Source: Ruditapes philippinarum (Eukaryota). Taken from it: a stretch of DNA of 64,000 bases. Location: positions 372,001 through 436,000 of the forward strand of contig NW_026854157.1 of the NCBI RefSeq assembly GCF_026571515.1. Reading direction: 5' to 3'. Under the pieces are notes generated by a model. It was not told the origin of the DNA. It did no database searches and worked only from the letters and a program-made list of their open reading frames with translations. Positions within the stretch are counted from its first letter, which is position 1; the number at the start of each line of letters is the position of its first letter. Both the position numbers and the translations under genes were made by a program. Shown here one piece after another: positions 1,946 to 64,000 of this stretch.

Positions 1946-4900
1946 TTACTGACATTGGGCAACACCTTTTAGTACGATGGATGTTCCATCAATGCGTAAC
2001 AACGAAGGCCATACTAAGTAATCAATGAGTGTCCCTGTTTTAGTAAAGGCTCTGTACATTTCTGTTGAGAAAATGTCTCTATGTGTGGTATTGTCGCTTT
2101 GAATTTTCAGTTTGTCTTTGTTCTCATATATTTCCCAACACACGTCAAAACATTTGTTTATGTAAGATCTGACAGCACCGTAACCTGTTGGAATTTTGGT
2201 ATCTTGCGACTTCAAATATTTTAAGTATTTCTGAAATAAAAACATATCTCATTTGATTCAGACCTGTAATTTATATATGAAATACAGGAAACTTTGTTAG
2301 TATCGAACTTTTTGGGAACTTGTATGTTCCTTGTAAAGGAACACATCATCGCCAATCTTTACATGGACACGAGTATTTAATAAAATGTAACTTAAGTATA
2401 TTTTAATGTTAACGCCTTTGCAACTTGTGCGAATAGCAATGGACATAATATATCTCCTTGCTTTATTTCTCTTGTGTCATCGGAACAGTGAGATAAGTAA
2501 GACAGTGAAGTTTACTGTTACAGTATATACATTTTGCTTAACAAAATATATGCAACTAAAAGATGACTGATTATTATATGATAAGGAGGTAAAGCAATAT
2601 ATACCAAGAAGTGAAATCTAATTCAACATTGTATCACGTTACAATTTCAGTACGAGGCATGTGCTGTATGCAGATACCCACATTATTCACATAAAAAAGG
2701 AAAATAAGTGCGTGGGACGTGAAGAAAAATCATACACAAACACTTAAAAAAGAGTCAAGGAGGATAATGAACTAATGAAATTTGTTTGCTCAGTTCTTGA
2801 TCAAATTACTAAGTTATCTTGATTGAACTATAGCCCAAAAACATATAACTTACTTCAAGGGCAGATTCTTTTGTTGGCTTACTTATTCGGAACTGTTTCC
2901 CTTCTTTTTCGTTTTCAATATATTGCATAGCGTCCTAAAAAGATAAATTTGTCACTGAAAGCCATATAAATGAAATATTTTTTGTAGCCATCACACTCTT
3001 TAAAGTTTTAGCTAAACATGCATATTCTTCGGAAAAGAATTATATGTGTGCTACTAGATAAACAACTTGAACTGCAATAAAAGAGATCGGAAAAATAAAT
3101 CGGTTTGTATGGGACTGAAAATCAACAATAATACATTTAACTGTACATTTTGTAGTCGAATCGTTAAAAGTTCTGAAATATTACAAACATCTAATAAATA
3201 AATCCATTGCGGTTGTATATTTATCAAAGTCAAAGTCACTCCTGCTTACAAAGAGAATCTTTTTTAGAATCATTACTATTTCCTTCTCGTCCTTGATTAT
3301 TTTGTCTAATTCTTCAAATGCATTTGAATGATGTGTATCATAAAGCTCATTGTATGAATCCAAAATGTCTTTGATGTCAGCGGTATCCTTTGTTTTGAGG
3401 TTTGCAGAAAGCTGTATAATTTCTTGACGCATGCTAAAAAATACCTTGAATACTTTAATTTGATATAGATGTTTTGATTTGTTTTATAATTGTTATATCT
3501 TATTTAAGCTATCAATTAAGTGCATGCAGTTGATTGAAGGAGATATCAACAAAATGAATACATAAATAAAAACATGTATGTAAGCAAATTAATAAAGATG
3601 AATAAAAAAGATAAATAAACCGGATAAATGAACAAGAGGGCCATGATGGCCCAAGATCGCTCACCTGACCCATCGAACTCATCCGAACAATTACCTAGAC
3701 AGGTGAGTCAAAAATGTGACAACTACAGTTTTAACAAGGATAATCCATATTTGAGCAGTGTGACCTAGTTTCTTACCCAGGTGTCCCATATTCGAACTTA
3801 ACCTAGATATCATCAAAACAATCTTTCAGACCAATTTCCAGGATACTTGGATCAAAACAGTAGCCACTAGTGTTAACAAGATTTTTCTATTTTTAGCTCC
3901 GGTGACCTAGTTTTTCATGCGAGATAACCCATGTCCGAGAAATTACCTAGACAAGCATCCTGACCACGTTTGATGATAATTGAGTCAAAAATGTGATCAC
4001 TAGAATGTTAACAAGGTTTTTGCATATTTGGGCAGTGTGACCTAGTTTTTAACTTCAGGTGACTCATATTCAAACTTGACCTGGAAATCATCAAAGCAAA
4101 CTTTCAGACCAATTTTCATGATATCTGGATCAAAACAGTAGCCACTAGAGTGTTAACAAGATTTTTCTATTTAAGCTCCTGTGACCTAGTTTTTGACCCC
4201 AGGTGACCCATATTCAAACTTGAACTAGAAATCATCAAAGCAAACTTTCAGACTAATTTACAGGATATCTGGATTAAAACAGTAGCCACTAGAGAGTTAA
4301 CACGTTTTTTCTATATTTAGCTCCTGTGACCTAGTTTTTCATCTGAGATGACACTTGTTCGAACGTATTCGAGCAATTACCTAGACAAGCATCCTGACCA
4401 AGGTTAATGACAATTGAGACACAAATGTGACCACTAGAATGTTAACAAGATTTTGCTATTTTTTAGCTCTTGTGACATAGTTTTTCATCTGATATGACCC
4501 AAGTTAAACTCATTTGAGCTGTCAACAAGATAAGCATCCCGACAAAGTTTGATGATGATTGAGGCAAAAAAGTGACCGCTAGAGTGTCAATGAACAAGTG
4601 CGGACGGACGACGGACGACAGACAATGGCCGACGGACATTCAACGAGCCTAAAAACTCACCCGAGCTAGCTCAGGTGAGCTAAAAAGGATAAATAATCAA
4701 GAAAAACGAAAGAAACAAAACAAACACAATAAATAAACGGGTAAATGAATAATAAATAAAATTAAAAACAATGAAACAAACTTAATCATGTGTAAAACAG
4801 TTTGCTAGGCTCGTAAAAGATATGGTAATATACAACTATGGTTGTCGCATAACAAAATCTGACAAAATCGATAAACTGATAAATAAAATGGGCCAGTAAT

Positions 4901-5648
4901 AATGAGAAATAATAAATACACTCAATGCATACAGAACTGTATTGAACAAAATTTTATCAGTGTGTAAAGTATCTATTTACAAAAGACTTAAATTTGTGTT
5001 ATTTGATATAAATAAAGGGTATTAGTTGAAATGCAAAATATAAACGGTCGTTTAAATGTACAAAAAAAACCTTGGCCATAATATTTTTCATTAAAATACA
5101 TTATTTCATACCTTTGTAATTCATTAGTTTTAGATTCCAATTCGTGTTGTAACTGAAGAACCTTTTCGTCCAACTCGGATATGCATTTATCTCTCGCACG
5201 CAAATCCGAATTGTGCTGTTTTATTAGGGCTTTATTTTCATCTTGTGCATTCCAAAGTTCGTTTTTAAGCAAAAAATTTTCCGTATCTTGATCCTGAAGC
5301 GTAAAATTAATGACTTAATCTAATATTTAACGGACTCATTAACATCATCATCTTTTATATTTCAATGTATAAAACTTTTCGTTTATTTTTAGATATTAGC
5401 AGACACAAAATATGACTGAAAAAAGTGTTTTAGTATGTATGAATTAGAATATTACTTTGTTATGTTATGAAAGCTATCATGAAATGAATAAATTAACATG
5501 TTTGCTGATCATTCAAAACACTTGCAAATAAAAAAAAACTTTATTCATGAAGTATACGTTAACTTACCTCGGCAATGTATCTGCAATCTTCTAACTGAAT
5601 TTGTGATTTAACCAATATATCACAAACCTCATTTAATTCGTCGTCCAT
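1946..5648 (-). CDS. Short MIEAP/SPATA18 C-terminal-domain-like coiled-coil protein, copy A1 (5 coding exons, 270 aa)
   Basis: GT-AG exons 5648-5568 (MDDELNEVC...), 5293-5112 (coiled coil), 3433-3250 (DSYNELYDTHHSNAFEEL), 2934-2854 and 2230-1946 (CFDVCW...YRAFTKTG..IDYLVWPSLL...KGVAQCQ*). Phases join without stops (813 nt). The VWP.L..KG.A end resembles the MIEAP domain. A probable 5'UTR exon donor lies near 5960. Confidence 0.85.
3631..4686 (+). mobile_element. HINE/pearl-like non-autonomous element in A1 intron 2
   Basis: 5' end AACAAGAGGGCCATGATGGCCC..GCTCACCTG; ~140-145 bp internal repeats anchored on TGACCTAGTTTT; (GACG/GGAC)n tract; 3' hairpin CTCACC..GGTGAGCTAAAAA. Confidence 0.8.
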
Positions 5649-63160: not shown

Positions 63161-63633
63161 TAAGTCTAACCACACTTAAGTGAATTCTTATATATGCATA
63201 TAATTATGCTTCTAAAACAATTTTCAAACATCGAAGACTATGTAAATTATGTACTGCAAATATTTGTGCACATAGTATGTAATCATTAAAATATATACAT
63301 ACTGTCATTCATTTCTTATTGCAAAATTTGACCTAAACTTTATAGAAAATAAATTTCTGATTACCTCCCTTTAATAACATGAAATGTAAATTTGGTAAAT
63401 TCTTTACAAATAATGCTTTTTGGAACTTACAATATTGATAAATTTTCAATTGAGCATTATATTTATGATATTAAACCATAACAACTGAGTTAGAGAATCT
63501 TTAATAAATTTAAGGAAGACGTTTTTTTCTGAACGAACAAAAGGTGTCGTTCTATACATAAAACGTCTCACTGACAGGTCTTTTTTTAAATTCTTTTAAC
63601 GTGCTGGGTACCATTTGGCTTTGTTGTTTTTTA

Positions 63634-64000
63634 CTATTGAAACTTATGTCTTTCATTTGCCCACACCCAGCACTTACTGTACACTTCCGCACCGAGCAAA
63701 TTTCTTGCCCGAGAAAATTCTGAACGATCAGCATAACGGAAAAAGAGTCTCATATCACTGGCTGATGGCTCATCCTCATACTCTGTCTTTTTCGGAAGAC
63801 TCTGATGTTCATGGTCCCTGCTATAGTCTCTATAACCCCTAATTTGGCGTTGACTATCACGCACGTCCAATGAACCATAGTGAGCTGTATTTGGTCTGTC
63901 TAACAGCTTCTTCTGCGAATGTGATAAATATTTATTTTCATTGTAGTTGTAAGACACATTTTGACCAAAAGTATTACCAGAATCTATGTATTCGGATGGT
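63634..64000 (-). CDS. 3' end of the last exon of a further array member (E); gene continues beyond the window
   Basis: The frame is open to the window edge. A low-complexity linker is followed by PSASDMRLFFRYADR...AR..L...Y, which aligns with the C-terminus of D. The 3' flank (62805-63490) is homologous to that of D (52955-53310). Confidence 0.7.
   Translation of the reverse strand, partial: PSEYIDSGNTFGQNVSYNYNENKYLSHSQKKLLDRPNTAHYGSLDVRDSQRQIRGYRDYSRDHEHQSLPKKTEYEDEPSASDMRLFFRYADRSEFSRARNLLGAEVYSKCWVWANERHKFQ

What the first reader, a model, noticed from the sequence alone, without database searches (positions are those of the whole stretch)
1946..64000. Tandem array of at least seven MIEAP/SPATA18-domain-like loci in birth-and-death evolution
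Seen: seven co-oriented minus-strand loci (A1, B1, C, A2, B2, D, E), including intact, nonsense-bearing, frameshifted, chimeric and partial copies. The full-length copies share a short helical exon, a coiled-coil exon ending in phase 2, a Y.E[LI]YD exon (NxxDLSDxxRPTKLAE in the long type) and a CW...VWP.[LV]L..KG.AQ domain. Known: vertebrate SPATA18/Mieap is a single-copy, p53-inducible mitochondrial quality-control gene ending in ...VWPAL...KGEA. Inference: this is a lineage-specific expansion that reuses the domain. Fast turnover and variable N- and C-termini around a conserved core are typical of immune, stress or gamete-interaction families, so it may be an undescribed system.
Basis: partly seen in the sequence, partly recalled or inferred. 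Interest (0 to 1): 0.78.

Follow-up and report, generated by a model that had tools for sequence, protein, structure and literature searches.

The report
Clam MIEAP-domain gene array
This stretch of Manila clam DNA is part of a long row of duplicated 'mitochondria-eating protein' (MIEAP) domain genes, some working and some broken. The huge growth of this family in bivalves is already published, so the array is real but ordinary.

Summary
The window carries seven co-oriented minus-strand loci of the Pfam MIEAP family (PF16026).

- A1 is an intact five-exon, 270-codon gene. RNA contigs from three studies show its four introns spliced out exactly as predicted.
- B1 is an intact seven-exon, 502-codon gene, but chimeric: its first exon is D-type. 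It has Leu at an otherwise invariant Trp.
- A2 has one extra A in an A-run and a LINE in an intron.
- B2 has two TAA stops.
- D has two 1-nt deletions.
- C is a lone coiled-coil exon.
- E runs off the window and the contig.

The array is larger than reported: 15 C-terminal MIEAP exons over 196 kb of the contig, on both strands. The genome gives at least 143 exon matches on 65 contigs.

It is a lineage-specific expansion, but a described one: Regan et al. 2021 report 53.1 Mieap genes per bivalve against 0.6 in other species. This scan has also reported such arrays in at least six other pieces of the same genome.

Function is untested. Predicted models show a coiled coil followed by a helical plus small beta domain. 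The best solved look-alike is GrpE, at non-significant scores. No Hsp70-like gene lies within the 196 kb I searched.

The parts
1946..5648 (-). A1: intact, expressed short-type MIEAP gene of 270 codons. Exons: e1 5568-5648, e2 (coiled coil, phase-2 end) 5112-5293, e3 (Y.ELYD) 3250-3433, e4 2854-2934, e5 1946-2230 including the stop.
   Evidence: The exon model has AG/GT at every internal junction. It matches the 282-aa Mercenaria protein P0003 exon by exon. RNA contigs show joints 2230>2854, 2933>3249, 3433>5112 and 5292>5567. Pfam MIEAP scores 37.2 bits on e5.
10278..17429 (-). B1: long-type gene with an open 502-codon frame. Exons: e1 17352-17429, coiled coil 15936-16381, Y 15613-15814, m0 12696-12776, m1 12175-12264, m2 11508-11612, C 10278-10784. 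It is chimeric (D-type 5' end) and has Leu in place of the invariant Trp (VVLP).
   Evidence: Phases and splice sites are. The 5' region is 309/341 identical to D's and 16725-18155 matches 57773-59189 at 86.5%. Trp is invariant in 63 of 63 relatives. Expression was not tested.
20809..21354 (-). C: a lone coiled-coil exon/ORF of the E-type with a phase-2 GT donor. No MIEAP exons follow it.
   Evidence: It is 39.8% identical to residues 117-239 of P0068. None of the 150 relatives hits 17,600-20,800. The donor is visible.
24462..31595 (-). A2: recent copy of A1. Exons: 31515-31595, about 31054-31236, 25763-25946, 25367-25447, 24462-24746. It has one extra A in an A-run of exon 2, which shifts the frame.
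   Evidence: Exon-by-exon alignment to A1, with 6-nt flanks, gives 91/93, 184/195, 193/196, 88/93 and 292/297 identical. The indel is shown. Pfam MIEAP scores 41.0 bits on e5.
26333..29581 (-). Non-LTR retrotransposon (endonuclease plus reverse transcriptase, ORF in three pieces) inserted in intron 2 of A2. It is absent from A1.
   Evidence: Pfam gives RVT_1 at 2.8e-35 and Exo_endo_phos at 1.6e-12. The A1/A2 block alignment is interrupted at 25988/29583.
35318..40132 (-). B2: long-type pseudogene. Exons: e1-like 39932-40132 (no ATG in the open frame), coiled coil 39004-39467 with two in-frame TAA, Y 38679-38880, m0 38332-38412, m1 37855-37944, m2 36909-37013, C 35318-35941.
   Evidence: The stops are shown and the boundaries. 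The database protein P0030 (XP_060582812.1, 286 aa) is 100% identical over the m1 and C exons and covers m0 to C; it is a truncated model.
53658..58563 (-). D: long-type copy with a different C-terminal tail. Exons: e1 region 58378-58563 (1-nt deletion), coiled coil 57104-57570 (1-nt deletion in an A-run), Y about 56683-56889, m0 about 56166-56270, m1 about 55499-55590, m2 about 54960-55042, C 53658-54197.
   Evidence: Deletions and frames are; splice sites of the domain exons. It matches Mercenaria P0009. Its 3' half, 53308-56420, is 92% identical to L003:2028-5150.
63634..64000 (-). E: tail of the C-terminal exon. The MIEAP part of that exon and exons m2 and m1 lie in the next 1.9 kb (C2644:436001-437882), where the contig ends. 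It also reads VVLP.
   Evidence: An open frame of 219 codons crosses the window end. Relatives hit L002.

Best explanation
**What it is.** The window is the last 64 kb of a tandem cluster of MIEAP-domain (Pfam PF16026) genes in the Manila clam. The cluster spans at least 196 kb and has 15 C-terminal MIEAP exons. It is one of dozens of such clusters in this genome and belongs to the bivalve-wide Mieap expansion that is already in print.

**How the cluster evolved.** It grew by duplication of multi-gene blocks. The order on the minus strand is E, D, B2, A2, C, B1, A1, then an E/D chimera just outside the window. Unequal exchange, deletions and point damage followed. The outcome in and at the edge of the window is:
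- one clearly working, transcribed gene (A1);
- one open but chimeric gene (B1);
- three damaged copies (A2, B2, D);
- one remnant (C);
- one copy cut by the contig end (E).

**How it may work (inferred, not shown).** Each protein is an N-terminal coiled coil, probably a dimerising stalk, carrying a C-terminal MIEAP domain. That domain is a helical hairpin/bundle followed by a small beta domain. By analogy with human Mieap, the stalk would bind partners and the C-terminal domain would bind a lipid or protein ligand. In that case the paralogues are variants of one scaffold or adaptor for organelle or protein quality control.
For: **Domain membership.**
- 63 of 63 database relatives match MIEAP, best E 3.2e-28.

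**Family size.**
- The genome gives 143 exon matches on 65 contigs. 35 contigs hold two or more matches, and together they carry 113 of the 143.
- On this contig I count 15 C-terminal exons between 242 kb and the end at 437.9 kb: 5 inside the window and 10 outside; 6 on the plus strand and 9 on the minus.

**Duplication history.**
- Window 1349-11013 matches 23874-36162.
- A1 against A2: intron mismatch 157/2740 (5.7%) and exon mismatch 23/812 (2.8%); dS 0.054, dN 0.023.
- B1 and B2 are only 68-80% identical at the DNA level.
- The mosaics are shown.

**Expression of A1.**
- All four predicted introns appear as joints with CT..AC ends in contigs of runs X15, X16 and X19, which come from three studies.
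- One 726-nt contig (X19) spans e5-e4-e3-e2, and one 866-nt contig (X15) spans e4 through e1 plus 310 nt of 5' UTR.

**Relatives.** Type-specific relatives of A (P0003), B (P0054) and D (P0009) come from one 97.8-Mb Mercenaria contig.

**Literature.** Regan 2021. Human Mieap has a hydrophilic N-terminal half with coiled coils and a structured hydrophobic C-terminal half (PMC10845071, passages read).

**Models.** P0003 has pLDDT 91.6, with one helix over residues 2-97 followed by helices and strands. The domain-only protein P0147 has pLDDT 91.2 and pTM 0.86.
Against: - Function is not tested anywhere here.
- Raw RNA reads of run X24 give only about 1-3x depth on the A1 exons, with 4% of the run read, and show no joint.
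- X15 and X16 are only guessed to be RNA, although their spliced contigs argue that they are.
- The frameshifts of A2 and D are single-base length differences, two of them in A-runs. They could be assembly errors; no reads were laid on them.
- The RNA contigs carry the A2 letter at 4 of 25 sites that distinguish A1 from A2. So A1 and A2 may exchange sequence, or partly behave as alleles.
- The block-duplication order is my reconstruction from pairwise similarities, not a tree.
Confidence: 0.85

Rival explanations
1. GrpE-like co-chaperone reading. The MIEAP domain is a GrpE-type module (dimeric stalk, helical bundle, beta head), and the bivalve paralogues are exchange factors or adaptors for the co-expanded atypical Hsp70s (HSPA12).
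For: **Fold searches.** GrpE/GrpEL1 chains are the top solved look-alikes for two independent models.
- Foldseek, P0003 model: ranks 1, 2, 3, 6-10 and 14; best E 0.051.
- Foldseek, P0147 model: ranks 1-8 and 11; best E 0.16, probability 0.57.
- VIA-align against 48,161 chains: GrpE at ranks 2, 3, 4 and 11. 1dkg_B gives Z 6.6, rmsd 3.5 A over 113 residues. These are the only rows among the top ranks that span both the helical and the beta part.
- In the second look, ranks 1-7 of 237 chains are GrpE, with Z 7.0-5.6.

**Other support.**
- Regan 2021 lists Hsp70 (68.1 per bivalve) and Mieap as the two big ancestral expansions.
- Three earlier notes of this scan report HSPA12 next to MIEAP arrays elsewhere in this genome (leads only).
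Against: - No fold match reaches E<=0.001, and Z stays below 8, which the tool itself calls the usual noise level.
- There is no sequence signal. GrpE is not among the 25 families listed out of 334 when 63 relatives are scanned at E<=10.
- hhalign of the MIEAP alignment against E. coli GrpE gives probability 0.4%, E 0.15, over 14 columns.
- The PDB profile search returns only coiled coils.
- No Hsp70-like gene lies in the 195,882 bases of this contig that I searched, using a 694-codon divergent Hsp70 ORF of the same genome as query.
- None of the 65 MIEAP contigs is among the 30 Hsp70-hit contigs. Both lists are truncated.
Confidence: 0.2
2. This is an undescribed, fast-turnover immune, stress or gamete-interaction system built on the MIEAP domain.
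For: - High turnover and variable N- and C-termini around a conserved core are real.
- MIEAP-annotated proteins change in abundance after cadmium exposure in Dreissena gills (PMC11036304, passages).
- The Pfam term is over-represented in mussel gill transcripts (PMC5549309, passages).
Against: - The expansion is described in print.
- A1/A2 dN/dS is about 0.43, from 8 synonymous and 15 non-synonymous changes. That gives no sign of diversifying selection, although the sample is small and A2 may be a pseudogene.
- I noted no signal peptide or receptor domain in the ORF translations; I ran no predictor for them.
- I saw no expression data under pathogen challenge.
Confidence: 0.12
3. Assembly artefact. 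The A2/B2 block is an alternative haplotype placed in tandem, so part of the 'array' is a false duplication.
For: - A1 and A2 differ by only about 5.5% at silent and intron sites.
- Transcripts from other individuals mix A1 and A2 letters: 4 of 25 diagnostic sites carry the A2 letter.
- Bivalve genomes are very heterozygous (general knowledge).
Against: - B1 and B2, which lie inside the same two units, are only 68-80% identical in DNA and about 60% in protein.
- They have different first exons.
- The units have different surroundings: C lies upstream of B1 only, and the LINE is in A2 only.
- Ten further C-terminal exons on the contig show that tandem copies are the rule here.
Confidence: 0.07

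Closest known systems
Bivalve Mieap orthogroup OG24 (Regan et al. 2021, Genome Biol Evol, PMC8382680)
   Same: It is the same Pfam family and the same phenomenon: tens of copies per bivalve genome. Ruditapes philippinarum is named in that paper.
   Different: In the passages I read, the paper gives counts and duplication nodes only. It does not give gene structures, subtypes (the short five-exon A type against the long seven-exon B/D/E types), pseudogene content or array maps.
Human Mieap / SPATA18
   Same: The layout is the same: coiled-coil N-terminal half, then the structured MIEAP domain at the C-terminus.
   Different: - Per Regan's counts for non-bivalves, it is a single or low-copy gene, against at least 143 exon matches here.
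- The clam A type is half the size, at 270 codons.
- p53 control, mitochondrial condensates and cardiolipin binding (PMC10845071) are untested for any bivalve copy.
- One-to-one orthology is not met.
GrpE / GrpEL1 nucleotide exchange factors of Hsp70
   Same: The predicted shape is alike: a long helix or stalk, a helical bundle and a small C-terminal beta domain. GrpE is the best full-domain structural look-alike in the PDB.
   Different: There is no detectable sequence relationship. Fold scores are in the noise range. No Hsp70-like gene is linked in this array.

Membership tests
MIEAP domain family (Pfam PF16026) | Profile match above the curated cut-off (27 bits) | tested here: met
   On the last exon alone, A1 scores 37.2 bits and A2 41.0 bits. 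B2 (23.8) and D (18.4) are below the cut-off on that single exon. 63 of 63 full-length relatives match.
MIEAP domain family (Pfam PF16026) | Both ends of the 195-position domain are present in one gene | tested here: met
   The Y exons hit profile positions 1-44 (B2) and 4-40 (A1). The C exons hit 119-193. The middle exons are found with relatives P0003, P0009 and P0054.
MIEAP domain family (Pfam PF16026) | Coiled-coil region N-terminal to the domain, as in human Mieap | tested here: met
   The model of A-type relative P0003 has a helix over residues 2-97. Coiled-coil exons are present in A1, B1, B2, C and D. Human layout: PMC10845071.
SPATA18 orthologue (one-to-one) | Single conserved orthologue of the vertebrate gene | tested here: not met
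   The genome gives 143 exon matches on 65 contigs, and the best matches lie elsewhere, for example C6225 at 90.9 bits. The window copies are members of a paralogue swarm.
SPATA18 function | p53 induction, mitochondrial condensates, cardiolipin binding | not testable with these tools
   Known only for the human protein.
GrpE (Pfam PF01025) | Sequence-profile match to GrpE | tested here: not met
   GrpE is not among the 25 families listed out of 334. hhalign gives probability 0.4%. The PDB profile search gives no GrpE.
GrpE (Pfam PF01025) | GrpE fold (stalk, bundle, beta head) | tested here: inconclusive
   GrpE ranks at the top in four searches, but with Foldseek E>=0.05 and Z 5.6-7.0.
GrpE (Pfam PF01025) | Binds an Hsp70 nucleotide-binding domain and speeds nucleotide release | not testable with these tools
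A bench assay is needed.
Birth-and-death multigene family | Tandem paralogues of different ages, with pseudogenes and fragments | tested here: met
   The A1/A2 pair is young (dS 0.054) and the B1/B2 pair is old (68-80% DNA identity). Stops, frameshifts, a remnant and chimeras are all present.
Birth-and-death multigene family | Copy-number or presence/absence variation between individuals | not tested
   Reads were laid on RNA runs on A1. DNA runs hold 0.39-0.66 of A1's words, which does not settle it.

The most novel reading that the evidence does not exclude
The MIEAP domain is a eukaryotic GrpE-like module, and the bivalve swarm of coiled-coil plus MIEAP proteins is a matching set of co-chaperones or adaptors for the co-expanded HSPA12-type Hsp70s. 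The 270-codon, expressed A1 type would be the minimal natural form in which to test this. Earlier notes of this scan raised the idea on other windows. Here it is only re-tested, with two other proteins.
Probability: 0.2. Interest if true: 0.7.

Novelty: new member of a known kind. Interest (0 to 1): 0.25.

Why it matters
It matters little as a discovery. The expansion is published, and the scan has met such arrays repeatedly in this genome.

It is useful as a worked example of how the family turns over, through block duplication, exon-1 swapping, fusion by deletion and decay. It also supplies a compact, demonstrably spliced and transcribed member (A1, 270 codons). That member is a convenient object for the first functional test of what the MIEAP domain does in bivalves: lipid binding as in human Mieap, or GrpE-like action on Hsp70s.

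Tried and rejected
**Leads that went nowhere.**
- **Sequence link to any solved structure.** A profile of 63 relatives against PDB sequences returned only coiled-coil proteins.
- **GrpE by sequence.** This was negative. I did not build a GrpE family profile, because I had no diverse GrpE set from a tool and judged a large database search not worth it.
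- **Whole-protein fold search.** The 97-residue helix swamped the list, so I folded a domain-only relative instead.
- **Linkage with Hsp70.** There are no shared contigs in the two truncated lists and no hit in 195,882 bases of this contig. Earlier notes report adjacency elsewhere, so this only shows that linkage is not general.
- **Gene conversion between A1 and A2.** I suspected it because exons differ less than introns. I dropped it as the main cause once dS (0.054) matched intron divergence (0.057). The four A2-state sites in transcripts keep some exchange possible.
- **B1 C-exon 'frameshift'.** The second ORF there (10397-10864) is an overlapping alternative frame that B2 also has. The true frame is open from 10784 to 10278.
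- **Extra loci in 40,200-53,600 and 59,300-63,600.** None of the 150 relatives hits there.
- **Pfam on the D and E tails, and on ORFs 51451-51801, 23514-23915, 59222-59515 and 48805-49071.** Nothing.
- **Literature.**
  - 'Mieap' with 'GrpE' gives one paper, which does not link them.
  - 'mitochondria-eating' with 'HSPA12' gives three papers, none linking them. I read passages of one; the other two I saw only in the listing.
  - The broad search was useless.
- **Supplements of Regan 2021.** These were closed. They may hold per-species counts or maps.

Full report
**What the window is.**
- It is AT-rich animal DNA with GC 0.29-0.35, and it lies at G000:C2644:372001-436000. The contig is 437,882 bp long and the assembly 1.41 Gb.
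- A database protein identical to four exons of locus B2 is XP_060582812.1, 'uncharacterized protein LOC132739174 [Ruditapes philippinarum]'. It was seen on one contig of 437,882 bp. The genome is therefore the Manila clam.

**Checking the observation: Pfam.**
- I scanned ten minus-strand ORF translations against Pfam.
- PF16026 (MIEAP) matched the last exons of A1 (37.2 bits) and A2 (41.0 bits), both over the 27-bit cut-off.
- Below the cut-off it matched the last exons of B2 (23.8) and D (18.4), and the 'Y.ELYD' exons of B2 (18.3) and A1 (13.9).
- Four ORFs did not match: two coiled-coil ORFs, a truncated B1 ORF and the E tail.

**Checking the observation: exon maps.**
- A search of the A2 last exon against 1.84 billion representative proteins gave 494 proteins at E<=0.001 and 8 at E<=1e-10.
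- Among them were full-length guides:
  - P0003, 282 aa, A type;
  - P0009, 485 aa, D type;
  - P0054, 640 aa, B type;
  - P0068, 604 aa, C/E type.
- Mapping these onto the window gave exon maps for every locus.
The joined step is left out, and database proteins stand in for it.

**The seven loci.**
- **A1.** Five exons, 813 nt including the stop, AG/GT at all internal sites, coiled-coil exon ending in phase 2.
- **A2.** It keeps every splice site and is 94-98% identical to A1 in the exons. It has one extra A in an A-run of exon 2 and a non-LTR retrotransposon in intron 2.
- **B1.** Seven exons, 1509 nt, open throughout. It has Leu where 63 of 63 relatives have the Trp of 'VWP'. E shares this change.
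- **B2.** Two substitution TAA stops in its coiled-coil exon. RefSeq models only its last four exons (P0030).
- **D.** All five domain exons are open, with splice sites. It has a 1-nt deletion in exon 1 and another in an A-run of the coiled-coil exon.
- **C.** Only a coiled-coil exon, 40% identical to the coiled coil of P0068, with a phase-2 donor. No domain exons follow it.
- **E.** It crosses the window end. Its C exon is an open 219-codon frame, and exons m2 and m1 lie before the contig end.

**History of the array.**
- Self-comparison shows that 1349-11013 matches 23874-36162.
- The A part of that block is young. Intron mismatch is 157/2740, dS is 0.054, dN is 0.023 and dN/dS is 0.43, from 8 synonymous and 15 non-synonymous changes.
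- The B genes in the same units are old duplicates, 68-80% identical in DNA.
- B1's promoter and first exon are D-type: 309/341 identical. B2's first exon resembles the N-terminus of the Mercenaria B-type protein (weak, E 0.13). B1 is therefore a D/B chimera.
- Just outside the window, L003 holds a copy whose 5' exons are E/C-type and whose 3' half is 92% identical to D's. It is an E/D fusion.
- I read this as duplication of a four-gene block (E, D, B, A) followed by deletions and decay. That order is inference.

**Extent of the array.**
- I fetched 131,882 further bases of the contig.
- With the window, I count 15 C-terminal MIEAP exons between 242 kb and the contig end: 6 on the plus strand and 9 on the minus.
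- Genome-wide, 143 exon matches at E<=0.001 lie on 65 contigs. 35 of those contigs hold two or more matches. These counts are lower bounds, because 150 of 202 candidates were scored.

**Expression.**
- Runs holding words of A1 were listed. Four RNA or probable-RNA runs were laid on window 1300-6000.
- All four predicted A1 introns appear as joints with CT..AC ends:

| Joint | Seen in |
|---|---|
| 2230>2854 | X15, X16, X19 |
| 2933>3249 | X15, X16, X19 |
| 3433>5112 | X16, X19 (X15 shows a variant, 3435>5129, with 14 other letters) |
| 5292>5567 | X15, X16 |

- These three runs come from three studies. X19 is recorded as RNA; X15 and X16 are guessed to be RNA.
- The raw-read run X24 gave only about 1-3x depth on the exons and no listed joint.
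- The contigs carry A1's letter at 21 of 25 sites that differ between A1 and A2, and A2's letter at 4. None shows A2's extra A.
- A1 is therefore transcribed and spliced as modelled. No other copy was tested.

**What is known.**
- Before consulting the scan's notes, I found Regan et al. 2021 (PMC8382680; passages read).
- The paper lists the Mieap orthogroup OG24 with 807 genes: 53.1 per bivalve in 15 species against 0.6 in 17 others. Three duplications in the bivalve ancestor are conserved in all the species they analysed.
- The central claim of a lineage-specific expansion is therefore already in print.
- Other papers mention MIEAP-annotated genes in mussel gill transcriptomes (PMC5549309) and in Dreissena gill proteomes after cadmium exposure (PMC11036304).
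- The scan itself had reported MIEAP arrays in six other pieces of this genome.

**How it may work.**
- Human Mieap has a hydrophilic N-terminal half with two coiled coils. Its hydrophobic, structured C-terminal half concentrates it in mitochondrial condensates and is proposed to bind cardiolipin-related lipids (PMC10845071, passages).
- The A-type relative P0003 models with pLDDT 91.6: one helix over residues 2-97, then four helices, then six short strands.
- The domain-only relative P0147 models with pLDDT 91.2 and pTM 0.86.

**Testing the GrpE lead.**
- I took up a lead from earlier notes and searched solved structures.
- No match reaches Foldseek E<=0.001.
- GrpE/GrpEL1 chains nevertheless fill the top of every list. 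They are ranks 2-4 and 11 of 48,161 chains by VIA-align, with Z 6.6-5.6, and ranks 1-7 of 237 in the second look, with Z 7.0-5.6. They are the only top rows that cover both the helical and the beta part.
- The tool warns that Z under 8 is common noise.
- Sequence tests are negative.
- This array has no Hsp70-like gene within 195,882 bases.
- The GrpE likeness is therefore a consistent but unproven resemblance of shape. It is not a membership.

**Verdict.**
- This is an ordinary piece of a published, functionally unstudied bivalve gene family.
- One tool (look-up of encoding contigs) was closed, so synteny with Mercenaria is unchecked. The supplements of the Regan paper were not available.

Noticed in passing
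window 3498-4753 (A1 intron 2) and 29583-30860 (A2 intron 2): A repeat built of roughly 144-bp units (TRF periods 144, 145 and 434) is enormously abundant in RNA libraries. Contig depth reaches about 37,000, and raw RNA reads reach about 300x on both strands, against 1-3x on the flanking exons. Many reads run on into other sequence. It looks like a high-copy, transcribed dispersed or satellite element.
   Followed up: partly
window 10650-10665 (B1) and C2644:436100-436200 (E, locus L002): Two copies, B1 and E, have Leu instead of the Trp of the 'VWP' motif, which is invariant in 63 of 63 relatives. Both otherwise have open C-terminal exons. This is either early decay or a tolerated variant.
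   Followed up: partly
window 53661-53800 (D), 63637-63780 (E), L003:2367-2500: The D/E-type copies and Mercenaria protein P0009 share a C-terminal tail motif of about 45 residues, roughly S.DVD.F.RWR....E.AR. It has no Pfam match. B-type copies instead end in a Tyr/Asp/Ser-rich tail closing with AWR.
   Followed up: partly
window 2031, 2889, 3324, 5610: Transcripts from other individuals carry A2's letter at these A1 sites. This suggests shared polymorphism or sequence exchange between the two copies.
   Followed up: partly
window 20809-21354: The orphan coiled-coil exon C keeps a phase-2 GT donor that is compatible with the phase-2 acceptor of B1's next exon at 15814. It could act as an alternative 5' exon of B1. 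This is untested.
   Followed up: no
window 209-1038, 14385-14858, 48007-48273, 50303-50808: Further tandem repeats with periods 137-168, 39/98, 142 and 162 bp lie between the genes. The ones at 15198-15426 and 49970-50811 are related to each other.
   Followed up: no
window 26333-29581: A LINE-type element (endonuclease plus reverse transcriptase) lies in the same orientation as A2. Its ORF is split into three pieces. It is absent from the A1 copy, so it inserted after the duplication.
   Followed up: partly
C2644:242001-372000 (loci L001, L003-L014): Ten more C-terminal MIEAP exons lie upstream of the window, six of them on the plus strand. The cluster therefore contains inverted segments. 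A 2606-aa database protein (P0004) looks like a run-on model across several such genes.
   Followed up: partly
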